NCBI GenBank assembly: GCA_965240325.2
Contig: OZ251229.1
Coordinates: forward strand, 2,480,001 to 2,544,000
Direction: 5' to 3'
Source of the DNA: Rebecca billardiae RCC1528
Taxonomy: Eukaryota > Protista > Haptophyta
DNA: 64,000 nucleotides
Shown here piece by piece: positions 1,928-60,546 of this stretch; the stretch's first letter is position 1, and the number at the start of each line of letters is the position of its first letter. The translations under genes were made by a program, and so were the position numbers. Under the pieces are notes generated by a model. It had not been told where the DNA came from. It made no database searches and saw only the letters and a list, made by a program, of their open reading frames with translations.

Positions 1928-4113
1928 TGACCGCGTTCCGCGGTCCTTCCGTAGAACCAACGCAGAACTTTAGGGGCCCGCGGTGTACCCTCCGTCGGCT
2001 GCTGTCAGTCTGACATGCGTAACAGTCGCCTGAGCTGCCACCGCCAACTCAGTTGCCGCCCACCGGGCCGGCGGGCCGAGTCACTGTCGCCGACGCCGAC
2101 GCGCCGCCCGGGCCGCGCGGGGAAGCGGCCGCCGTGGCGCGGGCCGGCGCGTGCGCGCGTGCGGGCGCACCTGCTTGAGGTGCTCGCGCTGCGCCATGCG
2201 CTCGACGACGGGCCGCTGGTCGCTCAGCCGGCTCGCCTCGTGCCGGCAGAGCGAGAGCGCGCGCCACGCGGCTGCCCCGGCCTGCCGCTGCGCAGCCGCG
2301 CACCGAGACCGAGCGGGAGCTCGGGGTGGAACGAGGCGAGCGGGGCGTCGCGCCTGCCGCCGCGCGTGCGCGCCTGCTCCACCGCGCCGCCGTGCTCGCC
2401 CGCCGCCTCCTCCGCCGCGTCGGCGGCCTCGAAGACGGCGGCGGCCAGCCAGCGGCAGGCAGTCGGAGCCCGTGCGCGCTCAACCGGCGCCGATCGCCTC
2501 GACGGCCGTCTACTCCACAGCTGGCTGCTCGAGCTGCTGCACGGGGCGTCGCGACGAGGGCGCCGCGCGCGCCCAGCGCGTCCGTCGCCGCGTCGCGCAG
2601 CGCGTCGAGCTCGGCGCCGCGCTTCGCCAGCTCGGCGCACAGCGCCTCCGCGCACACGTGCTGGCATGCAGCACGGCCTCTCTAGTCTCTGGCATCAGTA
2701 TCGCCGTCGACCGAGTTGAGGAGGAGCTCGCGCTCGGCGTCGAGGAGCGAGCTCGCGTGCTCGAGCTCGCCCTTCAGCTGCGCGAACTCCGGGCGCATCC
2801 GGCTCATCTCCGCTGCGTGGCTCCGGGCGCGCTCCGATCCTCAAGGCGTCGCCAACGAGCTCGTGAGCGTGCTCCGGACTCGGCTCGCCCTTGCGCGCTC
2901 CTCCTCGAGCGACGAACGCGCCCGCGGGCAGGCTGTTGACCGCCGCCTCCGCCGCGATCTCGCCGCCCCCGCCGCGATCTCGTCGCGCATGCTTTGCAGC
3001 GGGGCGCTGTGTGCGCGCCGTCGGCACGGCCTGGCGAGACTCTGAGGCGAGACCGCGGACCGAGACGCGCGCGACGCCTCGGGGAGAGCCGTCGGAGCGG
3101 AGCGCGAGGGCGAGAGCAGAGCGCGAGGGGGAGACCAGCGGCCGGCCGGCTCCCGCCACCGCGCGCGCACCGCGGCGTACGCGGCGCCGACACGCACGTC
3201 CCCGGCCAGGGCGCCGCAGCGACGAACGCGAACGAGCGAGCGAGCAGCCGTGGGGACTCGCTCGCTACTCGCTAGACGCTCGGGCAAAGACCCTCCGTGC
3301 TCGTTCGAATAAATATACGGGGCCGCGCGCGCGCCTGGCGGCTCCTGTTTAGTGAATAAGTAGCAAAACTTGATCACTTCCAAGTGCCCGTAGTGTGTGG
3401 CCTATGTTTCCAGCACCAAGTGATGCATCGGTAAATAACAGCGCGCCGCGCGCGCACGCAGTACGCCGACATGCAGTAGTTGAGGAGGACCCTGACCATG
3501 CACATCAACATGCACTTTCAAAAGGTTGCGCTTAGGCCCGGTTTGTAGGCGGGTAACTTGTTACGGTTTAACAAGCCGCCATAGGCGCCATTCAAAGAAT
3601 CTCGTTTCACATTAGTGCACAGGCGGTTCATCCATCGAGGCAGGCGGGTAATGTGGTTGAACAAGCGCTATTCAAAAGGATCTCTTTTAATATTATAAGG
3701 CGGTTCATCCATCGAGACAGGCGGGTAGGTGTTTAAACAAAGCGCTATTCAGAAGCATCTGGCCTCATAGCTGTTTTCGACCCAAAACAATCAAACGTCG
3801 CTCGGCAAACTCGTACTCCAGCATACAAGAATGACAAAAATACTCACTTGTTTCACCCCCGGGGTATCTGATCCCACGTCCGTCCATCGACTTATGCGGA
3901 ATGGCGTGGGCGCGCTTATTTCGTCAAGCGCGTAGTTGCTAATGCAGAGCACTATGGGCCAACGTACCCCTCGAAAAAGCGAAAACTCACCCTCCAACAC
4001 CCCTCAAAATCGTCCCCCGTCCCCTTTTCTTTGATCAAAAGATCTTTTTGACAACGTAGTGAGGGCCCCCGGCGGGGCTCCACGCTACGCGCTCCGCCCT
4101 ACACCGCGGGCCA
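1928..4113 (+). mobile_element. Non-autonomous repeat element, copy A (TA|TGACCGCG ... CCGCGGGCCA|TA)
   Basis: Colinear homology with 58581-60546 over the first ~1.1 kb and the last ~120 bp. Both copies share the same termini in AT-rich spacers. Contains a frameshifted minus-strand coiled-coil-like ORF remnant. Confidence 0.8.
3548..3760. repeat. Degenerate ~77-bp tandem repeat (about 2.5-3 units) inside element copy A
   Basis: AGGCGGGTA...AACAAGCGCTATTCAAA..ATCTC and AGGCGGTTCATCCATCGAG recur. Confidence 0.75.
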
Positions 4114-46690: not shown

Positions 46691-46974
46691 GAATCAAATT
46701 ATATATATATATATAACTAATAATAACAATACCACTGATACTAGCTATACTAGTACAGCAGCTAGCCGTACAGCCGATTCTGACAGATGGAATCACAGTC
46801 ACGGACAACGGGACACCCTCCGTCTCCAATTTCAGTACTAATCATTCGACAGACGAATACTCATTAGTCATTACGCATCACGAATAATTACTGCGCCGCC
46901 ATCGTGCCTGGGCGGATGCGTGAGCGGTGCGATGGCGGAGAGTATTGTACCAGCCAGAAGCCAGGGAGGTGTTC

Positions 46975-48138
46975 ATGACGATCACGATGGACACGGCAGC
47001 AGAAGCGCGCAGTCGCGCAAAGCGCCTCGATTCGACGGCGATTGGCCTCGCTAGTGTAGTGCTCGTAGTCGTCCATTCGCCCTCACCTGCCTCTGCATCA
47101 GCCGGAAATTATGCCAGCAGCTGCAGCACGAACATCTCAGCAACGAAAACAACGGAATGGCGCGACGTTCGTGCTGCAGCCGCCGGCGGCTGCAACACGA
47201 GCGCGACGGAATGGCGCGAGGTGCAGATTGACGTCGCCATCGTCGGCATGCCCAAATGCGGCACCACATACCTTCGCAATCTCTTGGCAATGCACCCAGA
47301 GCTTGCATGCCCGAGCACGGCGCTTGGCGAGGACCCCAGATGCTTGGAGGAGACATCCAGGACGAAAGGGACGCCTTTGTGGCAAGCCCGCCCTCCGGTC
47401 GACTTTGTGCGCCGCATGTGCGCGACAGCCATGGGACCTGGCAATGGAACACGGAGGCGCGTGGTGGTCGGCGAACCGATGCTTCTTTTTCGGCCGTGGC
47501 TCCCTGGCAGCATTGTGCATATCCCCTGCGCCCGCGCCATCGCGTGCATCCGCGAGCCGATTGCATGGCTGGTTTCGGCCCGCAACCACGTGCTCAGGCA
47601 AATGCACGCACATCGCCTGGCTGCATGGCGGTGGCGGACACTGACTGCCTGTCCAGCCAATCATACACCGTCAACGCCACCCTCGCTCGCAGACATTGCG
47701 CTTGGCTGCAAGTGGAACTGGGTGCACAGCATGAACTACGACAATCTCCCGCGCCAACTGAGTGAGCTGGGGCATTTGATGCTGGGCGCGGACGATGTGG
47801 GGCCACAGAAGGCGTTCCAGCGCATGACCGTGGTCAGTCTCGAGGCCATCGAGCACGACCAGGTTGGCACATGGCTGAGGCTAACGAGGTGGCTCGGCCT
47901 CGAGGATGTGCGCTCCCTTGCAGAGCAGCCAGACCCCGTTGGAAAGGCCAAGGATCTGATTGGGGGGGGCTGGTTTCAGTCATGGTGCACTGACGTGAGC
48001 CCAGATGTGCGCGCTGCTGTGCACGGTCACTTTGAGCGCGCGTACAGCGCATTATTGGGCTTCGTCCTCCAGCGCCTGCCACTCAGCATTCTTTCCCCGA
48101 GCCAGGTGGCAGGCACGGCACGCGTGCTGACATGCTAA
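46975..48138 (+). CDS. PAPS-dependent sulfotransferase-like protein (type II membrane)
   Basis: 5'-PSB loop IVGMPKCGTTYLRNLLAMHP; 3'-PB motif IREPIAWLVSARNH; N-terminal hydrophobic anchor; intronless. Confidence 0.8.
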   Translation: MTITMDTAAEARSRAKRLDSTAIGLASVVLVVVHSPSPASASAGNYASSCSTNISATKTTEWRDVRAAAAGGCNTSATEWREVQIDVAIVGMPKCGTTYLRNLLAMHPELACPSTALGEDPRCLEETSRTKGTPLWQARPPVDFVRRMCATAMGPGNGTRRRVVVGEPMLLFRPWLPGSIVHIPCARAIACIREPIAWLVSARNHVLRQMHAHRLAAWRWRTLTACPANHTPSTPPSLADIALGCKWNWVHSMNYDNLPRQLSELGHLMLGADDVGPQKAFQRMTVVSLEAIEHDQVGTWLRLTRWLGLEDVRSLAEQPDPVGKAKDLIGGGWFQSWCTDVSPDVRAAVHGHFERAYSALLGFVLQRLPLSILSPSQVAGTARVLTC

Positions 48139-48627: not shown

Positions 48628-49199
48628 TAGTCAGTCCGAGTGACCGTAGCCTGATCTCAGCTGTCATTGTCAATGACTCAATACACCACTACCCTGATAC
48701 TCATGTAGTCATGAGCCTCATGCTGGTCGATGGCACAGATTATGATGGCCAGATCCGCACTGATCAGTACCGTGTTGCCAGTAGAGTCTAATGACTAATA
48801 ATGACGTCACTGGGCGGCGGTCTCATGCCGTCTGGGCGGTTCCGAGACAGTGCGACTCGCGGCCGATCGACTCACTATCGACGGACGTGTGACGCGGACC
48901 GTCACCGTGCCGGCCCGGCGGAGAGAGTGCCAGACTGCCGCTGGCGTCGGCGCGTCGCCATGCCACATGCGCAGAGCGGCCGAAGGCCAGCGCACTGGCA
49001 GTGACTGGCACCGCCACAGCCTCTCTAAGGCTCTATCATAGGGGCCACACTTTAGCTAGTCTCAGACTCAGTCAGTCTTAACCGATCTTAAGTCATAAGA
49101 GAGCGAACGACTTTACCCGCGGGACACGCGATCTCTATTTCCGGCTCACCGCCGTTGATGAGGGTCACCGGCTTTTTCCTTGGCGCCCACAGACTGGAC

Positions 49200-52100
49200 A
49201 TGGCCCGGCGCCGGCGCGCCGTCGCGCTGACGGCGCTGGTCCTCGCGGCCACGCCGGTGCGGCTGCAGCTCCCGCCGCTGCCTCCGTCGCCGCCATCCCC
49301 GCCTGAGCCACCCATGCCGCCGTCACCGCCGTCACCCGCCCCGTCCGCGCTCGCGAGCGCGTGCGTGAACGGCACGGATGGCAACCTCGTGTACACGGAT
49401 GGCGCGGTGCCCACGTGCTTCTCCTCGTTCGCGTCGGCGAACGTCACGTTTGCCGCGGCGCGTGCGCTGTGCGCTACCCTCGGTGACGCCCACGGCCTCG
49501 TCGGCCGGCTCGCGCTGCCCCCCGACGCCGATGCGCTGGGTGCGATCTTTCTCAATTTCGAGCTCTCGAAGCTCGGCGGTGCTGGCCCGTGGCTCGACGG
49601 CACGGACGCCGTGAGCGAGGGCGTGTGGCTCGATTCGACGGGCGCGGCGGTACCCTACCTCAATTGGCTGCCCGACAGCGACCCGCCAGCTGACGACACG
49701 GCGCGCAACTGCATGCACATTCGCGAGCCGCAGGTGTCAGGTGGGTATTACTCGGATCTGTCGTGCACGGCACAGCTGGGCTATCTGTGCCAGCTGCAGG
49801 AGCCGGCGTCGCCGAGCCCGCCGCCGCCGCCGAGCCCGCTGCCGCACCCGCCGCCCGTGCCGCCGCCGAGCCCGCCGCCGAGCCCGCCGCCCGTGCCTCC
49901 GCCGAGCCCGCCGCCGCACCCGCCGCCACCGCCTCCGCCCGGCCCGCCGCCGTCGCACCCGCCGTCACCGCCGCAGCCGCCGAGCCCGCCCAACCCGTCC
50001 CCGCCTCCGCCAGCTCCGCCCAGGTCGCCGCCATCGGCGCCGCCTCCGCTCTCGCCGCCCCCGAGCTCGCCGCCGCCCGCGTCGCCGCCGCCGCCGCCTC
50101 TCACGCACGTGCTGCTCGTGAAAGGCTGTGGCACGCAGTCGGAGGCGTGCGTGCCGCTCGAGTCTGCGGCGGCCGTCCGCTGCTGCCAGGCGTCGCAGGA
50201 GTACGCGTGCTTCGACGCGATCTGCACGGACGAGATGGCAGGTGGGAATCTCTCGCTCGAGCCGCTCGTCCCGGGCCACGACGGCACCAACGCGACGTAT
50301 GAGCTGGCCGCGGCCGAGTGCGCGGCGTGGGGGCACCGGCTGTGCTCGGCGGACGAGCTGCGCAACGGCAGCTGCTGCGCGTCAGGCTGCAGCCACGACA
50401 ACCGGCAGGTGTGGAGCAGCACGCGGTGCGACGCGCAGTCGCCTCCGCCGGCACCGCCGCAGCCGCCCAGCCCGCCCAACCCGTCCCCGCCTCCGCCAGC
50501 CCCGCCCTCTTCGCCGCCATCGTCGCCGCCGCCGCTCCCGCCGCCGCCGAGCTCGCCGCCGCCCGCGTCGCCGCCGCCCGCGCCCCTCACCCACGTGCTG
50601 CTCGTGGATGGCTGCGGCTCGATGGGCGAGTCGTGCGTGTCCGTCGACGCGACGGGCCCCGTGCGCTGCTGCCAGGCGTCGCAGGAGGACGCGTGCTTCG
50701 ACGCGATCTGCACGGACGAGGCGAACGGCGGCAGCCCGTCGCTCGAGCCGCTCGTCCCGGGCCACGACGGCACCAACGCGACGTATGAGCTGGCCGCTGC
50801 CGAGTGCGCGGCGTGGGGGCACCGGCTGTGCTCGGCGGACGAGCTGCGTGGGGGGTCTTGCTGCGGCACGGGGTGCACGTACAATCGGCGGCAGGTGTGG
50901 AGCACCACGCGCTGCAACGCGCCGCCGTCGCCTCCCACGCCGCCACCGTCGCCGCGCGCCCCGCCGTCACCGCCGCCCTCGCCGCCGCCGAGCCCGCCGC
51001 CCTCGCCGCCGCCGAGCCCGCCGCCCTCGCCGCCCTCGCCGGCCTCGCCGCCCTCGCCGCCGCCCCCTCCGCCCCCTCCGCCCCCTCCGCCCTCGCCGCC
51101 GCCCTCGCCGTGCGAGCTGCGCATGGCCGGAAGCGCCGGTCACAACGGCTCGTGCTACGCGCTGCTCAGCACGGGCCGCACGTTCGACGCGGCGCGGCTC
51201 GCGTGCGCGGACGCCTCGCCGCAGGCGGACCTGGCGGTGATCAGCTCCGAGGCGGAGAGCGCGTTCGTGCTCGAGAGCCTGCTCTCGGGCGCGAGCAACG
51301 CGTGGATCGGGCTGAGCGACGCGGACGAGGAGGGCGCGTGGCGCTGGGTCGACGGCTCGCTCCTCGCCGACGGCACGTTTGTCGACTGGTCGTCTGGCGA
51401 GCCCAACGACTCGGGCGACGAGGACTGCGCCGAGATGTACGCTTCCAACGGGCGGTGGAACGATCTTCCGTGCACCTCGCTCAGGCTGGCGCTGTGCGAG
51501 GTGGCGGCCGAGGCGTACCCGCCCTCGCCGCCGCCCGCGCCGCCGCCCTCGCCGCCGCCGGCGGTGTGCACCGAGATGAGCGCTGGCCCCTCCTCGTCGT
51601 CCTCGCTGCTCGACGGCTCGGCGTGCGAGCGCGAACCGAGCGACGATCGCCTCGAGTCCCTCTCCGCCGCGATGGCCTCCGAGCCCGGGCGCGTGGTCGT
51701 GTCGTGGGCGTTCGTCCCGGCCGCGTCGGGCACGTACAGCACGGACCACGGCGTCTCGGTCCGGCTGCTCGCGCGGATGCCCGGCGCGGCTGCATTCGAG
51801 ACGATCGCAGACCGCGCGTACGCGCCGTCTGCGCTCGAATTCGGTTCGACCAACTCCGACTCGCTCGAGTGGGCCGTGCCGTCTGACGCGGCGTGCGGCA
51901 GCGCGGTGCTTCGGCTCGCGCTGGAGGATCGCGCGAGCGAGGAGGACCAGGTCGACGGCGAGTGCGCCACCGACGCGGATGGCAGCCACTTCGACAATCT
52001 CGAGCTCGAGATTGCGCTCGTGGATGCAAGGCCGCCGAGCCCGCCCGGCGCGCCGCCGGGCTCGCCGCCAAGCCCGCCGCCGAGCCCGCCGCCGAGCGCG

Positions 52101-52785
52101 CCTCCGAGCCCGCCGCCGATGAGCCCGCCGCCGGGCTCGCCGCCGAGCCCACCGCCCTCGCCCCCGCCGAGCCTTCCGCCCCCGCCGCCGCCGAGCCCAC
52201 CGCCCTCGCCCCCGCCGAGCCTTCCGCCGCCGCCGCCGCCGAGCCCACCGCCCTCGCCGCCGCCGAGCCTTCCGCCGCCGCCGCCGCCGAGCCCGCCGCC
52301 CTCGCCGCCGCCGGGCCCGCCGCCCTCGCCGCCGCCGAGCCCACCGCCCTCGCCGCCGCCGGGCCTTCCGCCCTCGCCGCCGCCGAGCCCGCCCCCGGCG
52401 ACCCCGCCGAGCCCACCACCGAGCACGCCGCCATCGCAGCCGCCCAGCTCGCCGCCGATCCCGCCGCCGAGCCCACCACCGAGCCCGCCGCCGTCGCAGC
52501 CGCCGCCGAGCCCGCCGCCGAGCCCGCCGCCGTCGCAGCCGCCCAGCTCGCCGCCGAGCCCGCCGCCGAGCCCGCCGCCGGCCTCGCCGCCCGCGCCGCC
52601 GCCCAGCTCGCCGCCGGCCTTGCCGCCAGCCCTGCCGCCGGCGCCGCCGCCAGCGCCGCCCCCGTCCCCGCCGCCTGAGCCCCCCGGCAGCCCGCCACCG
52701 AGCCCGCCGCCCTCGCCCGGCCCGCCGCCCAGCCCGCCGCCCTCGCCGCCACCGTCGCCGCCGCCGCCCAGCCCGCCGCCCGGCC

Positions 52786-52820
<35 letters not shown>

Positions 52821-55800
52821 AAGCCCCCGCCCAGCCCGCCGCGCGTGCTCTTCGCGCCGCGGCTCGCGCGGGCCTCCTTCGACGCGAGCGGCACGCGCGT
52901 GCTGGTGCGCTTTGAGCCGTTTCCGCGAACGAACCGCGCGCGGATGGCGGGCGTCGCGCCGTGCGCGGCGGTGCTGGACGACGCGACGGTGGCGCTCGCG
53001 CGCGGCGACGGCTCGGACGAGCCGAGCTGCTACTGGGAGGACGACGACGTGACCCTTGTCATCAACCTGGACAGCACGAGCGCCATCCGGCCTGGCACGA
53101 GCCTGAGCATCCGAGACGACACGCTCGCGCCCGCGGCGTTCGAGGGCGCGTGCCCGGATGCGCTGTGCGTGGTCGGCGCGTCGATCGCGGTCGACGCGAC
53201 CGACCCGTGCGACGGCGCGCCGTGCCCGAGCCCGAGCGCGGTCCTCGCCGCGCCCGCGCAGCTCTCCGCGTGCCCGGACGCGACGCTCACGCTTGACGGC
53301 TCGGGCTCGGCGGGCGGGGGCGTCGGCGCCCTCCGCTTTTCCTGGGACGTCGAAATCGGCTCGACGGACAACGCCGATGCGCTCCGGGCGCACCTGCGCG
53401 CGCTGCCGGCCGACGCGAGCGTCGTCGAGCTCGGCGGAGCGGGCGGGCTGCTGACGAACGGCACGCACTTCGCGTTCGTCCTGGTCGTCGAGTCGGCGCT
53501 CGGGCAGACGTCGGCCGCCGCCGTAGCGAGCGTGAGCCGCTCCGGCAGCGGGCGCACGCCCACGTTGCGCATCGACGGACCGGCGACGCAGCTCTCGCGC
53601 TCGTCGCAGCGCGCGCGCGTGCGCGCGTCCGCCACCCTCGCGCCATGCTTCGACACGAGCGCGGAGGCGTTCGCGCTCGACTTCTCGTGGGCGCACGTGG
53701 GCACTACGGTGAGCGCCAGCGCCGAGCCCGCGGCCGACGTGCCTCTTCTCGACCTCTCCGCCGCCACGGGCCCGACCCTCTCGCTGCCGCCGGGGTCGCT
53801 GTTTGCCGGCCGCACGTACTTGCTGGTGGTGCGCGCGGCGATGCGCTCCGCGCCGGAGGAGTTCGCCGAGGCGGCCGTCGGCGTCGCCGTGCAGGCGGAG
53901 GCGCTGGTCGCGACGATCGCGGGCGGCGACCGGCGCGCGTCGGTGGCGAGCGCGCTCGTGCTCGACGCGAGCGCGTCGTATGACCCGACGCGCCTCCCGC
54001 CCGCCGCGCTCGCGCCGCTTGAGTTCTCCTGGGCGGTGTTCCGACTGGACGCGCTCGGCGAGGCGGTCGCCGAGGTGGGGCTGGGCGGCTCGGTGGCGGT
54101 GGGGGAGGCGGTGCTGGCGCTGGAGGCGGGCACGCTGCCCCTCGGCACATACCGCGCGACCGTCGCCGTGCGCGCGGGCGACGGCCGCGCGGCGAGCGCG
54201 AGCGTGCGCCTCGAGCTCGTGAGCGCGCCCACGCCCGTCGTCACGCTGGCGCCGCTCGACCGCGCGGTCTTCAACGCGGACGACAAGCTCGCGCTGCGCG
54301 TCACCTCGGTCGGGCTCGCGAGCCCTGCGCAGGTCGCGGCGGCGCTCGTCGCGGCCGGGCTGGCGACGGACGCGGCGGACGCGGCGGCGCGCAACCTCAC
54401 CGCCGCCGACGTGCCCTGGCAGTACGCTTGGAGTGCGCGCGCGCTCGCGAGCGGCGCGGCCGTCGAGCTCGGCTCGGCGGCGACCACCACGACCGGCGCC
54501 GCGCGGCGCAACCTCGTCGTGCGCGCGGGCGCGCTGCTGCCCGGCGCGGCGTACGCGTTCGAGCTCGGCGTGAGCGCGGCGGGGACGGGCGCGCAGGCGG
54601 TGCGGCTGCAGCTCACGATGAACCGCCCGCCGTTCGGCGGCTCGCTCGCCGTCTCACCCGAGTCCGGGACGGCCGGAACGACGAGATTCGATCTCGCGGC
54701 GAGCGGCTGGTCGGACGACGGCGCGGACCACCTGCCGCTGCGCTACGCGTTCGCATACGAGCCTGCGGCGGGCGCGGCGGCGGACGGCGCGGACGCGCGC
54801 TCGCTCGGCGGCGCCACCCTCTCCACCCGCGCCGCCGCCTTCCTGCCCGCCGGCACGCACCGCGCGCTCGTGCGCGTCTCGGATGCGTACGGGGCGAGCG
54901 CGACCAAGCGCGCCGGCGCGGCGGTCACGGTGGCCGAGCTGCAGCTGGACGACGCGGCGGTCGAGTCGGTGCTCGGCGCAATCGACGTGGCCGAGGCGAC
55001 GGGCGAGTCGGACACCGTCTACCAACTGGTCGCCTCGCTCGCCGACTCGCTCGAGGGCGCGGGCTCCGGCGGTGGCGGTGGCGAGCCGGGCGGCGGCGGC
55101 AACGGCACCGCAGGAGGGGGCGCGCTCGGCGACGCGGCCGCGCGCAGCACGCGGCTCGCGCTGGTGCGCTCGCTCGAGGACGCGGCGGGCACGGCGGAGC
55201 CGACGGAAGAATCGGTGCGGCTCCGCGCAGAGAGCGCCTTCGCCGTCCTCCGCGTCACGGACCAGCTCTCGGCCGACGCGCAGGTCGAGGGCGCCGCGCT
55301 CGCGCTCGGCGTCGCCGAGTCGGCGGCGAGCGCCGGCGTGGATGATGTCACCTCGGCGCTCCTCGCCTCCACCCTCTCGTCGCTGCTCGCCGCGGGTGAC
55401 GCGGAGCTGAGCGCGGCGTCGGCGCGCGAGCGCGATGACGCTGTGAGCGCGGCCGCGCGCACGCTCGCCTCCGGCCTCGTGCGCGGCGCGGTCGCGGGCG
55501 AGGACGGGCGCTCGGCGCTCTCGGCTCTGGTGAACGTGTCCGCGACGCGCGCGCTGCTCGAGGCGCTGGAGGACACGCCGTTCCTCGCGCCGGGCGGCGA
55601 CGCGGGCTCAGTGCAGCTGCCCGCGTCGATCGCGGAGGGCGCGGCGGCGGGCGGCGCCGGCGGCGGCGCGGTGCTCACCGACAGCCTCGACCTGCAGCTG
55701 GTGATCTTCGGCACGAATGTGCATGCGGACGAGGCGCTGCCGCCGGGCGGCGACGGCGGCGCGGGCGGCGCCGCGCCGGGCGCGCTGTCCACCAAAGTCT

Positions 55801-58312
55801 TCTCGGTCAACCTCGGCGCGCCCTCCTCCGCCCCCGACGGCGCTGATGGCAGCACCGCGCCGCTCACCGTGGCCGGGCTCAGCGCGCCCGTCGTGATCAC
55901 GGTGCCGCTCACGGCCGCGGGCGTGCCGCCCAACCCGGTCGGCGCCTCCGGCAGCTGCGCCGAGTTCAACGGCTGCGCCGGGCGCGGCGCGTGCGTCGGC
56001 GGCGCGTGCGCGTGCGACGCGCCGTGGGTGGGCGCTAACTGCTCGCTGCGCGCGGCGTGCCGGTTCTGGAACGAGACGCGCGGCGCGTGGGCCGCCGACG
56101 GCTGCACCACGCTCCACGAGCAGACCGCGGCGAGTGAGCCGCCCGCGCTCGTGTGCGCTTGCACGCACCTCACCGACTTTGCAGGCATCTTCATCCCGAC
56201 TTCGGTCGAGGCGCTGGAGGCGGAGGTGGCGGCGGTGAGCTCGTCGGCGAACACGTTGTCTCCCGAGGACATCGCCGCAGTCGCGAGCCCGAGCCTCGAC
56301 GACATCTTCGTCGACAACCCGATCGTGTACGCCACGGTGTTCGCGCTCAGCGCGGCCAACCTCCTGTGCCTCGCCGCCGCGGTCGGGATGGACCGGCGCG
56401 CGCGCGCGGACGCGGCGAAGCGCGCGCGGCGCGAGGCGGCACTGACCTCGCCGGCGGAGGCGCTGCGCCGGCTCGCGCACGTGCCGCCGGCGGCCGAGAA
56501 GCGACGGCACCCGCTCACGCCGGCGTCCGTCCCGCCAGCCTCGCCGCTCGCGCTCGTCGCCGTCACGCCCGCGCCGCCGCGGCACACGCGCGCGACGCGC
56601 GCGCCGGCGTCGCTCGGGCCGGCGGCCGAGCGCGGCGCGTGCGCGCTCGCCGACGCGCCCGGCGGGCACGTCGGCGTGCGCGCTGCGGAGGGCACCGTCT
56701 CCGACCGAGTCGAGTCGGCGCTCGACGCGCCCGACGCGCACGAGCGCGCGCGCGTCCTCCAGGCCGCCGTGGGCATCCAGCGGCACACGCGCGGCCGGCT
56801 GCAGCGGCGCGCGGCGGCGATCGCGCGCGAGCGGCGCGCGGCCATGCTCGCCGCGGAGGCGGTGGCGGCGGCGGAGGAGCGAGCGGCGGCGGCGCGCGTG
56901 CGGCGGATCGGCGCGGCGATCAAGACCGACCACACCCTCCTCGCGCTCATCTACGCCGACACGTCCGACGAGGGCATCCACCGCGCCGAGTTCGTCCAGA
57001 TCTTCTTCAACATCCTCGCGCTCGAGGGCGTGATTGAGTGCCTGCTCTTCGCGGACGCGCCGGCAGACGGCTCGATCCGGCTCGTGCAGCTCGTGCTCAT
57101 CTCGCTCTTTGTCGTGGTCGTCGTCGTGCCCGCGCTCATCCTCTTCAAGGCTGTCTTTGCCGCGACGCGCGCGCGCAAGCCCAAGGTGGTCGACCGGCTC
57201 TTCTCGCGGATGCGCGCGCTCGCGCACGGCGTGGGCGCGCGAGAGGGCGCGGAGGAGGCGGCGGCGCCGGCGCCGCGCGATGGCGCGCGTCTCTCTCGCT
57301 CGACGAGCGCAGGCGCCGCGCTGGCGGGCGCGCGCACGGCGCCCGCGGGCGCGGGCGCGGGCGCGCGCCGCCGCCGGCCGCCGCCGCCGCCGCTGCGCAC
57401 GGCGCCGCCGCCGCCGCCGCGCTCGCCGCCGCTCACGCGCCGCCTCGACTTCGACTCCGTGAGCGCGCCGCGCGCGCCGCCGCCGCCTTCGCCGCCGCGC
57501 CCGGCGCCGCCGCCGCCGCCGAGTGACGGCCGGCGCCGCCGCTCCGCGCCGCCGAGCGCGTCGGGCGCGGCCGCGCCGCCGCCGGTGGGCACGGGCGAGC
57601 TCCGCACCCTCTTCCGCCGGTTCGACGCGGACAACTCTGGCACGATCGAGTTCGCCGAATGGCAGGCACTTCTCTCGGCGCTCGGGATGGGGATGAGCGC
57701 GCGGCGCGCCCGGCGTATCTTCGTGCAGCTCGACGCCGACCGGAACGGCCTGATCGAGCTCGACGAGCTCGAGCGCTGGTACCAGCAGCAGAAGCAGGCA
57801 CGCGCGCGCGCGCCCGCGCGGCTGTGGCTGCGGCTGCGCGCGCGCGCTCGGCGCGGCGCGAGGAGGCGGGGGCAAGGCGCGCGCGCGGAGCGCGCAGAGC
57901 CCGCGGGGCGTCGCGTCTCACGCGCACCCCCGCCGCGCGCGCGCAGGCCGAGTTCAAGCGCGAGCAGCGCGCGGAGCGGTGGCGGCGGTACGCGCCCTCG
58001 CCGCTCGCCAGGTCCGCGCTCGCGTGGCTCTTCATGCTCTCGTGCTACACCGTGTTTGCGATGCTGATCGTGGCGTACGGCCGCTCGTTCGGGAACGCAA
58101 AGTTCGGCCGGCTCGTCGCGGCGTGGGCCGGCGCGCTCGCCACGACGTTCGTGCTGGAGGAGCCGCTGCTCATCACGATCTCGCACGTGATCCCGTGGCT
58201 GCTCGAAGGGATCGCGAGCAACGAGGCGGTCAGCGTGTTCATCGCCGAGATCTGGTCGTCGGGCGTCGGCAAGGCGGTCGCGGAGGTGGTGAACCTGTGC
58301 CGCGGGGGCTGA
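49200..58312 (+). CDS. Giant polycystin-1-like receptor: signal peptide, 2 C-type lectins, 2 Cys-rich repeats, SPPP stalks, REJ, EGF-like, GPS, 5 TM, IQ, 2 EF-hands; GC-AG intron 57798-57946
   Basis: C-type lectin motifs WLDGTD..EGVW and WIGLSD..EGAWRW..GEPND..EDC..WNDLPC. REJ motifs LDASASYDP and NRPPFGGSLAVSP. GPS CRFWN..W..DGC..CACTHLTDF. IQRHTRG. EF loops DADNSGTIEFAE and DADRNGLIELDE. Confidence 0.85.
52031..52840 (+). repeat. Ser-Pro(3-5) extensin/pherophorin-like coding repeat
   Basis: About 270 codons of PPSPPPS repeats; shorter tracts at ~49805-50100, 50440-50585 and 50920-51110. Confidence 0.95.
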
Positions 58313-58580
58313 GAGTCTTGGCGCGCGTGGGTGGCCGGGCCCGGTGTCATCGGAGCGAGTGGATGGTGGCCGCAAGCTGCTGAAGGGGGAGCGGGCGCCA
58401 CGGATGACACGATGATGATGATGTCGCGTAGTAGTACTAGTACTGCTAGTATATAACTCGATCCGCCTATATATATACTGCTCCGCCGGCCGGATATGAT
58501 CGACGGGCGGATGATGATGCTGATGATGCTGATGATGATACTCATGATTGTCGGGCGGATGATATATATATATATATATA

Positions 58581-60546
58581 TGACCGCGTTCCGCGGTCTT
58601 TTTCCGTAGAACGAACGTAGTTCGGGGCCCGCGGCGCCCCCTCCGTCGGCTGCTGTCTCAGTCTGACATGTGTAACAGTTCGCCTGAGCTGCCACCGCCA
58701 ACTCAGTCACTGCCGCCCACCGGGCCGGCGGGCCGAGGACTGTCGCCGCGGGTCCGCGGGCCGCCGCGGGGACTCCGGACTAGCGGCCGGCGCGCGCGCG
58801 CAGGCAGGGCGAGAGGCGCTGGCGCGGCGCGAGCCGGCGCGTGCGCGCGAGCGGGCGCACCTGCTTGAGGTACTCGCCCTGCGCCATGCGCTCGACGACG
58901 GGCCGCTGGTCGCTCGTGCCGGCAGAGCGAGAGCGCGCGCCACTGCTGGCCCCGGCCTGCCGGCTGCGCAGCCTCGCACCGAGACCGACCGAGCGGAGCT
59001 CGGGGCGGTGGAACGAGGCGAGCGGCGCGTCGCGCCTGCCGCCGCGCGTGCGCGCCTGCTCCACCGCGCCGCCGTGCTCGCCCGCCGCCTCCTCCGCCGC
59101 GTCGGCCTCGAAGACGGCGGCTGCCAGCGGCAGGCTGAGCCGCGCGCCGGCTCACTCACACTGTGAGTCACACCCGCGGTCGCCTCGACGGCCAACTATC
59201 CACAGCTGCTCGAGCTGCTGGAGGGCGCCGCGACGATGGCGGCGCGGGCGCCCAGCGCGTCCGTTGCCGCGTCGCTCAGCTCGTCGAGCTCGGCGCCGCA
59301 CTTCGCCAGCTTGGCGCCTAGCGCCTCCGCGTGTCACGTGCTCGTGCACGTCAGCCTGCTGATACGCCGCCGCCCATCGGCACTTCTGGCATCTGCGCGC
59401 GCAGCTGCTGCAGCTCGACGGCGGAGTCGTCGCGGCTGGCGGCGAGGGTGCGCACCGCGTCGATTGCCGAGGCCTGCAGCCCGGTGATCGCCGCGTCGAC
59501 GCGCGCGGCGATTTCCCCACGCAGCTCCTCGCGCCACGTGGCCGCCGCTCGCGTGGCAGGCAGCTGGGCACCGCTGCGCGACCCGGAACCGGCGCGCGTT
59601 TCACTGATGCTCCTGCTCGTCCTCACGCTGCTGCACCTCCGCGCCGCCGTCGACCGAGTTGAGGAGGAGCTCGCGCTCGGCGTCGAGGCGCGAGCTCGCG
59701 TGCTCAAGCTCGCCCTTCAGCCGCGCGAGCTCCGGGCGCATCCGGCTGCCGCGCCGCTCGCTCGCAGCGGCGCGCTCTGCTCCGGGCGGCGAGCGACGAG
59801 CTCGCGTGCTCCGGACTCGGCTCGCCCTTGCGCGCTGCTCCTCGAGTGACGAACGCGCCCGCGGGCAGGTTGTTGCCCGTCGCCCCCGCCGCGATCTCGC
59901 CGCCCCCGCCGCGATCTCGTCGCGCATGTGTCCGTGGCGCGCGCCTGCGAGGTGACAGGCGGGCCGCGAGCTCAGCCTCGGGGAGAGCGGAGCGAGAGGG
60001 CGCTGAGACGCGCGGCCTGCGAGGCGACAGGCGCGCTCGGGGAGAGCATTTTACTATTCACATTTAGAAGTGATCAAATTCCCCGAGCCCTTGCCTTGCC
60101 GTTTTTATCGGTTGGCGGTTGGCGGCAATCTCATACTGCGGCCTGCGAGGCGACAGGCGCGCTCGGGGAGAGCATTTTACTATTCACATTTATTAGAAGT
60201 GAATAGTGATCAAGTTTCCCGAGCCCTTGCCTTGCCGTTTTTATCGGTTGGCGGTTGGCGGCAATCTCATACTTAAAATCGCGCTCGTAACGAACCGTTA
60301 CACTAATGTCACGTCCAGCTGACGTCCAGATCGCACTTTACTTGAGGGAATCAGCTGGACGCGCTTTTTTTCGGCCTAATGGACCTCTCTATGCGATCTC
60401 AAAAACTCGAAACTCGGTCTCCGCCAGCCCTAAAAATCGCCCCCCGTCCCTTTTTTCTTGATCAAAGATCTTTTTGAAACGTGGTTCGGGCCCGCTGGTG
60501 CGGGCTCCACGCTGCGCGCTCCGCCCTGCACCGCGTCCGCGGGCCA
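58581..60546 (+). mobile_element. Non-autonomous repeat element, copy B ((TA)n|TGACCGCG ... CCGCGGGCCA)
   Basis: Homologous to 1928-4113 with the same termini; preceded by about (TA)9. Confidence 0.8.
60012..60273. repeat. Tandem duplication of a ~126-136-bp unit inside element copy B
   Basis: 60012-60137 and 60138-60273 are nearly identical. Confidence 0.9.

What the first reader, a model, noticed from the sequence alone, without database searches (positions are those of the whole stretch)
49200..58312. Channel-less polycystin-1-like receptor wired to Ca2+: IQ where PLAT normally sits, EF-hands in the TM3-TM4 loop
Seen: a ~2300-aa ectodomain (two C-type lectins, one with EPN; duplicated Cys-rich modules; SPPP stalks; REJ; an EGF-like insert) ending in an intact GPS (HL|T at ~56166-56174). 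TM1 follows, then an IQ motif (~56760-56810), a PKD1-like HTLLALIY..HRAE segment, TM2-3, two canonical EF-hands (~57600-57780), TM4-5 and a stop. Known: animal polycystin-1 has REJ-GAIN, TM1, PLAT, TM2-5 and then a 6-TM TRP-like unit. Inference: this is an autoproteolysed, glycan-sensing 5-TM receptor that keeps only the polycystin N-terminal membrane module and receives Ca2+/calmodulin input directly, possibly for adhesion or mechanosensing.
Basis: partly seen in the sequence, partly recalled or inferred. Interest (0 to 1): 0.78.

Follow-up and report, generated by a model that had tools for sequence, protein, structure and literature searches.

The report
Channel-less polycystin-1-like lectin receptor
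A very GC-rich haptophyte alga encodes a ~2,990-residue surface protein with sugar-binding lectin heads on the self-cleaving front half of a polycystin-1-type receptor that has calcium-sensing motifs but no ion-channel half; it is one of at least 80 such genes in this genome.

Summary
Window 49200-58312 is a two-exon gene. Exon 1 is 49200-57797, the intron 57798-57946, and exon 2 57947-58309, followed by the stop. Tool results confirm:
- a strong EPN/WND C-type lectin domain and a weak N-terminal one;
- a REJ domain;
- a GAIN fold ending in HL|T at 56166-56174;
- TM1, then an IQ-like motif just below the Pfam cut-off;
- TM2-3, two canonical EF-hands, TM4-5 and a stop.

The membrane module of the closest paralogue was modelled. 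Its best structural match among 48,161 PDB representatives is polycystin-1 TM1-5 (Z 13). A deep family profile weakly finds polycystin-1 at the equivalent post-PLAT/TM2-3 position (E 1.4).

No PLAT or channel domain is present in this gene. None was found in 20 sampled paralogues, or in about 90 public relatives that all end just after TM5.

The gene is not unique. At least 79-80 paralogues share the module. 23 of 30 sampled have the EF-hand pair, and 17 of 25 the IQ-like motif. This scan has already reported the family on other DNA of this genome. Public relatives from Pavlovales are only auto-annotated, and I found no paper on the family.

Ca2+/calmodulin control, self-cleavage and glycan sensing remain inferences. 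The intron has a non-canonical GC donor, and no RNA run was listed.

The parts
49200..57797 (+). Exon 1 (2,866 codons): signal peptide through the second EF-hand
   Evidence: Continuous ORF. The end is set by the conserved intron position in six paralogues.
57798..57946 (+). Intron, 149 nt, non-canonical GC-AG (donor cag|GCACGC, acceptor gcgcag|GCCGAG)
   Evidence: Six paralogues have an intron at the same codon with GTGCG donors. L017 has the same acceptor context. The intron-free paralogue L016 is collinear across the junction. No RNA evidence.
57947..58312 (+). Exon 2 (121 codons plus stop): TM4, TM5 and a C-terminal amphipathic helix
   Evidence: 62% identical to the end of the intron-free paralogue, which stops at the same place. 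All invariant family residues are present: W27, G49, W60, E72, P73.
49200..49268 (+). Signal peptide (MARRRRAVALTALVLAATPVRLQ)
   Evidence: Read from the translation; an inference from sequence only.
49362..49844 (+). N-terminal divergent C-type-lectin-like domain, without EPN or WND
   Evidence: Pfam Lectin_C E 0.0011, 20.1 bits, below the 22.6 cut-off.
50100..50450 (+). 12-Cys module, copy 1
   Evidence: No Pfam family. 77% identical to copy 2. Only 7 matches in the genome. The nearest Atlas clusters are uncharacterised haptophyte fragments.
50586..50936 (+). 12-Cys module, copy 2 (tandem duplicate)
51177..51500 (+). C-type lectin domain with EPN (51399-51407) and WND
   Evidence: Pfam Lectin_C 2.5e-25. 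PDB matches to DEC-205, mannose receptors and the DC-SIGN CRD, down to 1.4e-21 for DC-SIGN.
52032..52841 (+). Ser-Pro3-type stalk, 270 residues
   Evidence: Composition scan and translation.
53754..54950 (+). REJ domain
   Evidence: Pfam PF02010 2.1e-38, aa 1519-1917.
54987..56315 (+). GAIN domain with an EGF-like insert and the GPS; HL|T at 56166-56174
   Evidence: AlphaFold2 pLDDT 83.7, pTM 0.83. Foldseek top hits are GAIN domains of BAI3 (3.6e-10), BAI2, latrophilin, CELSR1 and GPR126. Pfam GPS 35.3 bits. HLT position.
56322..56390 (+). TM1
   Evidence: Hydropathy. Helix 100-135 in the paralogue model has pLDDT above 90.
56760..56813 (+). IQ-like motif (IQRHTRGRLQRR) in the first cytosolic loop, where PLAT sits in polycystin-1
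   Evidence: Pfam IQ E 0.0029, 17.7 bits, below the 20.3 cut-off. The same position carries AAxx[ILM]Q[RK]xxRG[RK]xxR in 17 of 25 aligned relatives.
56928..57161 (+). Conserved DHTLLALIY...HRAE motif, TM2 and TM3
   Evidence: 79 matches in the genome. 173 public representatives. A weak profile match to polycystin-1 at its post-PLAT motif, TM2 and TM3.
57597..57785 (+). EF-hand pair with canonical loops DADNSGTIEFAE and DADRNGLIELDE, in the TM3-TM4 cytosolic loop
   Evidence: Pfam EF-hand_7 1.2e-09 and EF-hand_1 2.4e-10. PDB matches to calmodulin-like proteins. 23 of 30 sampled family members have two such loops.
58016..58192 (+). TM4 (58016-58081) and TM5 (58112-58192, with the family's EEP motif)
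   Evidence: 80 matches in the genome. Helices 689-718 and 720-761 in the paralogue model have pLDDT above 90.

Best explanation
**What it is (shown by tool results).** This is an intact member of a large haptophyte family of surface receptors built on the front half of a polycystin-1-type protein.
- The ectodomain runs from the signal peptide to TM1, about 2,370 residues.
- It carries one sugar-site-competent C-type lectin domain, a divergent lectin-like domain, two copies of a haptophyte-specific Cys-rich module and Ser-Pro stalks.
- These sit on a REJ domain and a GAIN domain with an intact HL|T site.
- Five membrane helices follow. On the modelled closest paralogue they resemble polycystin-1 TM1-5.
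- There is no PLAT domain and no channel half.
- The topology puts the IQ-like motif (TM1-TM2 loop) and the EF-hand pair (TM3-TM4 loop) in the cytosol.

**How it probably works (inferred).**
- The protein cleaves itself at the GPS and stays as two associated pieces.
- Binding or pulling on mannose/fucose-type glycans by the lectin head strains or removes the outer piece.
- The 5-TM bundle passes this on to its cytosolic face.
- There the response is set by Ca2+, through the protein's own EF-hand pair and probably calmodulin on the IQ helix.
- The output partner is unknown. Separately encoded PKD2-like channels are candidates.
For: - Domains: Pfam hits. The lectin domain matches DC-SIGN-type CRDs and has EPN and WND.
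- GAIN fold on this gene's own sequence: pLDDT 83.7, with GAIN domains of adhesion GPCRs as top Foldseek hits at 3.6e-10.
- Polycystin-1-like membrane module, by fold: the model of the intron-free closest paralogue (61-62% identical; TM helices pLDDT above 90) has polycystin-1 8z6b_A as rank 1 of 48,161 chains. Z is 13.0 with 197 residues aligned, model 75-750 against PKD1 3063-3610. Every other listed row (Z 7.3-11.4) covers only the EF-hand region of the model.
- Polycystin-1-like membrane module, by sequence: a 98-sequence TM2-3 profile returns four PDB sequences at E<=10. Three are polycystin-1, aligned at the post-PLAT motif, TM2 and TM3.
- No channel: there is no PKD_channel hit in or after the gene. 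The nearest on this contig is about 250 kb away. 19 of 20 sampled paralogues and about 90 public relatives have the TM4-5 block at their C-terminal end, most within 25 residues of the last residue.
- The IQ-like motif and EF-hand pair are conserved at the same positions across the family.
- About 30 PKD_channel matches lie elsewhere in the genome.
Against: - No expression or splicing data were available. The intron donor is GC instead of the family's GT.
- The 5-TM fold evidence comes from a paralogue, not from this gene's joined product.
- Z 13 lies in the range that helical bundles can reach by chance, according to the tool's own note.
- The sequence link to polycystin-1 is not significant on its own (E 1.4). 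The smaller TM2-3 profile and both TM4-5 profiles found nothing.
- The IQ motif is below the Pfam cut-off.
- Cleavage, sugar binding, Ca2+ binding, calmodulin binding and any signalling output are all untested.
Confidence: 0.62

Rival explanations
1. Structural surface coat or adhesin. The family would be a set of hydroxyproline-rich, lectin- or propeller-tipped filaments that build or hold the cell covering. The 5-TM base would be only an anchor, and the cytosolic Ca2+ motifs would govern trafficking or turnover rather than signalling.
For: - Long Ser-Pro stalks resemble extensin/HRGP-type wall proteins.
- At least 80 paralogues share the base. Earlier notes of this scan describe other heads on it, and public relatives carry TIG/IPT domains.
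- No output domain of any kind was detected.
Against: - A simple anchor does not need a conserved GAIN/GPS, five conserved helices with invariant polar residues (W, E, P), an IQ-like motif and an EF-hand pair kept at fixed positions across genera.
Confidence: 0.2
2. This copy is defective at its 3' end. The GT-to-GC change in the donor would stop splicing, the reading frame would run on to the stop at 58065-58067, and the product would be a 3-TM protein with a junk tail and no TM4-5.
For: - Six paralogues use G|GTGCG at this intron, while this gene has G|GCACGC.
- No RNA run could be listed.
Against: - Exon 2 is an open frame ending at the family's usual stop. It is 62% identical to the closest paralogue and has every invariant family residue.
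- From general knowledge, GC-AG introns are spliced in many eukaryotes.
- The acceptor is the same as in paralogue L017.
Confidence: 0.12
3. The five helices are not derived from polycystin-1. They would be an unrelated bundle that happens to follow a REJ-GAIN ectodomain, and the resemblance would be convergent or a chance match of helical bundles.
For: - HMMER profiles of TM4-5 find nothing in the PDB, and the TM2-3 match has E 1.4.
- Foldseek did not list polycystin-1 among the rows shown.
- The tool warns that Z of about 13 can be a common arrangement for helical bundles.
- None of 32 distant relatives carries PLAT or PKD_channel, which would have bridged the families.
Against: - Two independent methods single out the same protein, out of 48,161 and 177,635 entries. 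Both align the same topological positions, TM1-5 by fold and post-PLAT motif plus TM2-3 by sequence.
- The module sits directly after REJ plus GPS, the pairing this report treats as the polycystin-1/REJ signature (PMC1934368 uses REJ, GPS and PLAT for the SpREJ subset).
Confidence: 0.12

Closest known systems
Polycystin-1 (PKD1) of animals
   Same: - C-type lectin domain in the ectodomain, REJ domain, GAIN/GPS with HL|T just before TM1.
- The same N-out topology.
- A TM1-5 module that is the best structural match in the PDB.
- A post-loop 'H..L....(T)RA(Q/E)' motif before TM2 that aligns with PKD1's 'HIWLSIW..FTRIQ'.
- Ca2+/calmodulin regulation is reported for PC1, through a motif in its C-terminal tail (PMC4999191).
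   Different: - No PLAT domain in the first cytosolic loop; an IQ-like helix lies there instead.
- No TM6-11 channel-like half, no TOP domain and no C-terminal coiled coil.
- An EF-hand pair is built into the TM3-TM4 loop.
- No LRR, WSC or PKD repeats; Ser-Pro stalks and a haptophyte Cys-rich module instead.
- At least 80 paralogues, against five in humans.
Sea urchin receptor-for-egg-jelly proteins (SpREJ1, SpREJ7 and others)
   Same: - C-type lectin domains, REJ and GPS.
- Family members with fewer than 11 TM and no channel half: SpREJ1, 8 and 9 have one TM, SpREJ2 two, SpREJ7 six with a split REJ (PMC1934368).
- SpREJ1 binds a sulfated fucan of egg jelly (cited in PMC4700764).
   Different: - Half of the sea urchin proteins keep PLAT.
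- That paper describes none with an IQ motif or EF-hands in the membrane module.
- The sea urchin family has 10 members.
Adhesion GPCRs
   Same: - A GAIN domain with a GPS directly before the first membrane helix; these are the top Foldseek hits.
- Modular adhesive ectodomains.
- A conserved hydrophobic stalk after the cleavage site (family consensus HL|TDFAG..VP.S).
   Different: - Five helices instead of a secretin-type seven-helix bundle.
- No 7tm Pfam match.
Auto-annotated Pavlovales proteins: 'REJ domain-containing protein' of Pavlovales sp. CCMP2436 (KAJ1633484.1, KAJ1635852.1, KAJ1617166.1) and 'EF-hand domain-containing protein' of Diacronema lutheri (KAG8462819.1)
   Same: - The same TM2-3 and TM4-5 blocks, with GPS, REJ and EF-hands.
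- They end right after TM5.
- These are members of the same family.
   Different: - Different ectodomain heads; TIG/IPT domains are seen in the relatives found by word search.
- They carry names given by annotation pipelines only.
- The D. lutheri genome paper does not mention them.
Ectocarpus Esi0130_0068
   Same: An algal, male-gamete-specific REJ plus GPS protein with 6-7 predicted membrane helices (PMC4700764).
   Different: - It is 1,427 residues long, and the paper reports no lectin domain.
- It was not compared here, because no sequence was at hand.

Membership tests
Polycystin-1 / REJ (PKD1) family | REJ domain | tested here: met
   PF02010 2.1e-38, 132.6 bits against a cut-off of 25, aa 1519-1917.
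Polycystin-1 / REJ (PKD1) family | GAIN domain with a GPS (HL|T/S) immediately before TM1 | tested here: met
   GPS 35.3 bits. HLT at 56166-56174. The model of 54987-56315 matches GAIN domains at 3.6e-10. Cleavage itself was not tested.
Polycystin-1 / REJ (PKD1) family | PLAT/LH2 domain in the first cytosolic loop | tested here: not met
   No PLAT hit in the gene at E<=0.1. Only two PLAT matches in the whole genome, neither at a family locus listed.
Polycystin-1 / REJ (PKD1) family | TM1-5 membrane module of polycystin-1 type, by fold | tested here: met
   Tested on the closest paralogue, not on this gene's joined product. 8z6b_A polycystin-1 is rank 1 of 48,161: Z 13.0, rmsd 4.8, 197 aligned, PKD1 3063-3610.
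Polycystin-1 / REJ (PKD1) family | TM2-5 sequence similarity to polycystin-1 | tested here: inconclusive
   The deep TM2-3 profile finds polycystin-1 at E 1.4 at the right position, as three of four PDB hits. The smaller TM2-3 profile and both TM4-5 profiles find nothing.
Polycystin-1 / REJ (PKD1) family | C-terminal six-helix TRP-like half (PKD_channel / TOP domain), giving 11 TM in all | tested here: not met
   No PKD_channel hit in the gene or in the remaining 5.7 kb of the window. The stop is shared with the intron-free paralogue. Relatives end after TM5. Not all animal members have this half (PMC1934368).
Adhesion GPCR | Secretin-like seven-helix bundle after the GAIN domain | tested here: not met
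   Five helices. No 7tm family in Pfam.
C-type lectin (Ca2+-dependent carbohydrate-recognition domain) | CTLD fold signature with EPN and WND sugar/Ca2+ site motifs | tested here: met
   Lectin_C 2.5e-25. EPN at aa 734 and WND are seen in the alignment with DEC-205 and mannose-receptor CRDs, and DC-SIGN matches at 1.4e-21. Binding was not tested. The N-terminal lectin-like domain is below the cut-off and lacks both motifs.
EF-hand Ca2+ sensors | Paired canonical 12-residue loops (D-x-D/N-x-D/N/S-G-x-I-x-x-x-E) | tested here: met
   EF-hand_7 38.8 bits and EF-hand_1 39.6 bits, both over their cut-offs. Both loops are canonical. In the paralogue model this region matches a calmodulin lobe.
IQ calmodulin-binding motif | [ILV]QxxxRGxxx[RK] on a helix | tested here: inconclusive
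   The IQRHTRGRLQR consensus residues are present, but Pfam IQ scores 17.7 bits, below the 20.3 cut-off. The motif is conserved in 17 of 25 relatives and lies on a helix in the paralogue model. No calmodulin test was possible.
Haptophyte channel-less REJ-GPS-5TM family (not described in any paper I found) | Shared TM2-3 block (H-motif) and TM4-5 block (W...SW...EEP) at the extreme C-terminus, after a GPS | tested here: met
   79 and 80 matches in the genome. All invariant residues are present.

The most novel reading that the evidence does not exclude
The first five helices of polycystin-1 would be an old, self-sufficient receptor unit that works without any channel half. In haptophytes it would have gained its own Ca2+ sensor (an EF-hand pair plus an IQ helix) and been multiplied into a repertoire of about 80 receptors. 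Their interchangeable heads (lectins here; TIG/IPT in public relatives, and other heads according to earlier notes of this scan) would serve to recognise surfaces, prey, mates or microbes. If so, this would be an algal counterpart of adhesion GPCRs, and a simple system for asking what the poorly understood N-terminal membrane module of polycystin-1 does.
Probability: 0.3. Interest if true: 0.8.

Novelty: new variant of a known kind. Interest (0 to 1): 0.55.

Why it matters
Polycystin-1 is the main gene mutated in human polycystic kidney disease. The role of its first five membrane helices is much less clear than that of its channel-like half.

This family keeps exactly that part, together with REJ and GAIN/GPS. 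It drops PLAT and the channel half and adds built-in calcium motifs. That shows the module can exist and be selected on its own, and it gives a natural minimal version to study.

For algal biology, about 80 giant modular receptors would make up a large and so far undescribed part of the haptophyte cell surface. This lectin-headed member is one of the shorter ones sampled and has a recognisable ligand class, mannose/fucose-type glycans.

Tried and rejected
- **Cis-binding test.** Complex prediction on the gene's EF-hand pair against its IQ segment, with two Ca2+, scored 0.02 (mark 0.34). This is no verdict, and I do not use it for or against binding in cis.
- **RNA evidence.** The look-up of sequencing runs listed no RNA run.
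- **Sequence searches against the PDB.** phmmer with the membrane region found only EF-hand proteins. The 30- and 32-sequence profiles of TM2-3 and TM4-5 found no polycystin. The 84-sequence TM4-5 profile found nothing.
- **Structure searches.** Foldseek against the PDB and the ESM Atlas shape search with the 790-residue model returned only EF-hand matches. The Atlas feature search of the TM4-5 part gave no usable hit.
- **Word searches.** Searches for relatives found only three proteins.
- **Bridging test.** I looked for PLAT or PKD_channel in 32 distant relatives and found none.
- **Cys-rich module.** It has no Pfam family.
- **Alternative donor rejected.** A GT donor at 57779 with an acceptor at 57877 keeps the frame, but it does not fit the paralogues.
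- **Downstream channel exon rejected.** There is no PKD_channel match in the rest of the window.
- **Spliced model.** The two exon translations were concatenated once inside a local script, only for residue numbering and hydropathy.

Full report
**Where and what.** The window is contig 12, 2,480,001-2,544,000, of a 72-Mb, 41-contig genome with about 60-82% G+C across the window. Earlier notes of this scan call it a Pavlovales-like haptophyte. My own searches agree: the named relatives are from Diacronema lutheri and Pavlovales sp. CCMP2436.

**Gene structure.** The finding lies in one long frame, 49155-58067, with an ATG and a signal-peptide-like start at 49200. A second frame, 57659-58312, carries the last two membrane helices.
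- The closest paralogue, on contig 7, has no intron here. It runs collinearly from the EF-hands through TM4-5 to a stop at the same place.
- Six other paralogues have an intron at the same codon, with G|GTGCG donors. One has the same acceptor context, cag|GCCGAG.
- The gene model is therefore exon 1 at 49200-57797, intron at 57798-57946 and exon 2 at 57947-58309 plus stop, 2,987 residues in all.
- In this copy the donor reads G|GCACGC, a non-canonical GC-AG intron. No RNA run could be listed to check splicing.

**Ectodomain.**
- Pfam finds a strong C-type lectin domain at aa 660-767, 2.5e-25. It has EPN at aa 734 and a following WND, and it matches DEC-205, mannose-receptor and DC-SIGN carbohydrate-recognition domains.
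- The N-terminal lectin-like domain is weak, at 20.1 bits against a cut-off of 22.6, and lacks both motifs.
- The two Cys-rich modules are a recent tandem duplication, 77% identical. They have no Pfam family and only seven matches in the genome, one of them in the contig 7 paralogue. They resemble only uncharacterised haptophyte fragments in the Atlas.
- Ser-Pro stalks separate the modules. The longest is 270 residues.
- REJ is strong, at 2.1e-38.
- I folded this gene's own 443 residues before TM1, using a 26-sequence alignment. The model has pLDDT 83.7 and pTM 0.83. Its best PDB matches are GAIN domains of BAI3, BAI2, latrophilin, CELSR1, GPR126, GPR110 and CD97, from 3.6e-10.
- The fold and residues needed for self-cleavage are therefore present. 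Cleavage itself is an inference.

**Membrane module.**
- After TM1 comes an IQ-like motif, IQRHTRGRLQR, at 56760-56813. Pfam scores it 17.7 bits against a cut-off of 20.3.
- Next come the DHTLLALIY...HRAE motif with TM2 and TM3, two canonical EF-hand loops at 57624 and 57732, and then TM4, TM5 and a short helical tail.
- With the N-terminus outside, five helices put both the IQ motif and the EF-hands in the cytosol.
- No PLAT or PKD_channel domain is detected in the gene. The rest of the window has no channel match; the nearest on this contig is about 250 kb away.

**Is the module polycystin-1-like?** The spliced product may not be joined for searches, so I modelled the intron-free closest paralogue from the GPS to its stop. 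It is 790 residues long and 61-62% identical to this gene's two exons. The membrane helices have pLDDT above 90.
- Foldseek saw only the EF-hand lobe.
- The exhaustive VIA-align search of 48,161 PDB representatives put polycystin-1 (8z6b_A) first. Z is 13.0, rmsd 4.8 Å, with 197 residues aligned at 18% identity. The model range 75-750 aligns with PKD1 3063-3610, which from my own knowledge of the human protein is TM1 to TM5.
- All other listed rows, Z 7.3-11.4, cover only the EF-hand region of the model.
- The tool warns that Z near 13 can arise by chance for helical bundles, so I looked for independent evidence.
- Small family profiles of TM2-3 and TM4-5 found no polycystin in the PDB.
- After the large library search I built a 98-sequence TM2-3 profile. 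It returned only four PDB sequences at E<=10. Three are polycystin-1 (E 1.4, 11.6 bits).
- They align over 91 profile positions with '..DKHIWLSIWDRPPRSRFTRIQRATCC..' and the next two helices. That is the post-PLAT motif, TM2 and TM3.
- A deeper TM4-5 profile found nothing.
- Neither line of evidence is decisive alone. Together with the REJ and GPS context they make homology with the polycystin-1 N-terminal membrane module likely. I put it at about 0.85.

**It is a family trait, not a feature of this gene.**
- The genome has at least 103 REJ matches, 79 matches to the TM2-3 block and 80 to the TM4-5 block. It has only two PLAT matches.
- About 30 PKD_channel matches lie mostly in separate, shorter frames.
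- Of 20 further paralogues fetched whole from GPS to stop, 19 end 40-70 residues after TM5 with a stop; the fetched stretch of the twentieth ended short of its stop.
- 23 of 30 sampled members, this gene included, have two EF-hand loops.
- 17 of 25 aligned relatives have the IQ-like motif at the same position. One subfamily lacks both motifs.
- The large library search with the TM2-3 profile found 173 cluster representatives at E<=0.001.
- Named members are 'REJ domain-containing protein' or 'hypothetical protein' of Pavlovales sp. CCMP2436, and 'EF-hand domain-containing protein' of D. lutheri. One cluster holds a Chrysochromulina parva fragment.
- Of 32 distant relatives, 21 have GPS, 6 an EF-hand pair and 5 REJ. 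None has PLAT or PKD_channel.
In most it lies within 25 residues of the C-terminus.
- This scan has already described the same chassis on other pieces of this genome.

**Literature.** I found no paper on this family. The D. lutheri genome paper does not mention it. Related known cases:
- Ectocarpus Esi0130_0068, a male-gamete REJ-GPS protein with 6-7 TM (PMC4700764).
- The ten sea urchin REJ proteins, which have C-type lectin domains and 0-11 TM, several without a channel half or PLAT (PMC1934368).
- Calmodulin binding to the C-terminal tail of polycystin-1 (PMC4999191).
- The stalk/tethered-agonist model for polycystin-1, in which the stalk acts on the TOP domain. That domain is absent here (PMC9672506).

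**Mechanism.** The following are shown by tool results:
- the domain order and topology;
- a GAIN fold with its cleavage triplet;
- a lectin domain with its sugar-site motifs;
- canonical EF-hand loops;
- a polycystin-1-like 5-TM fold, on the paralogue;
- the absence of a channel half and of PLAT.

The rest is inferred. The protein would cleave itself and stay as two associated pieces. Glycan binding or force on the head would be passed through the GAIN domain and stalk to the 5-TM bundle. The cytosolic face would be tuned by Ca2+ through the built-in EF-hand pair and by calmodulin on the IQ helix.

In the paralogue model, EF-hand matches span residues 378-667. This suggests that the conserved helix just after TM3 packs on the EF-hand pair. 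I could not inspect contacts, so this is only a lead. A test of EF-hand pair against IQ gave no verdict.

**Verdict.** The gene is an ordinary, seemingly intact member of a large haptophyte family that is a new variant of the polycystin-1/REJ kind. Its own distinctive points are the lectin heads, the duplicated Cys-rich module and a GC-AG intron.

Noticed in passing
window 46927-48138 (+): The upstream neighbour is a 403-codon ORF with a sulfotransferase match: Sulfotransfer_3 at 3.4e-08, but only the first ~45 profile positions.
   Followed up: partly
window 58400-58590: The 3' flank of the gene is an AT-rich patch of short repeats (GATGAT and TATATA runs) in an otherwise 70-80% G+C region. 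It may be a 3' UTR or terminator zone.
   Followed up: no
G000:C16:881490-881921 (-): A PKD_channel match (38.6 bits) lies inside a 6,448-codon open frame, so it may be a giant protein that does carry a channel half.
   Followed up: no
G000:C10:2963225-2963524 and G000:C33:704964-705284: These are the only two PLAT matches in the genome, in 553- and 848-codon frames. Neither coincides with a family locus listed.
   Followed up: no
L059, L063, L065, L066, L067 (contigs 37, 14, 3, 29, 16): A subfamily of the receptors lacks both the IQ-like motif and the EF-hand loops but keeps all five helices. The two Ca2+-related motifs were thus absent together in these five copies.
   Followed up: partly
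G000:C19:1573818-1630144: At least four near-identical family members sit about 17.6 kb apart on contig 19. This looks like a recent tandem array.
   Followed up: no
L018 (G000:C16:440378-443851): In this paralogue the conserved intron after the EF-hands is a multiple of three with no stop. A plain ORF reading would therefore insert about 70 junk residues.
   Followed up: partly
G000:C7:1312057-1320468 (-): The closest paralogue, in a 3,346-codon frame, shares the rare Cys-rich module as well as the membrane module. The two genes are therefore whole-gene duplicates on different contigs.
   Followed up: partly
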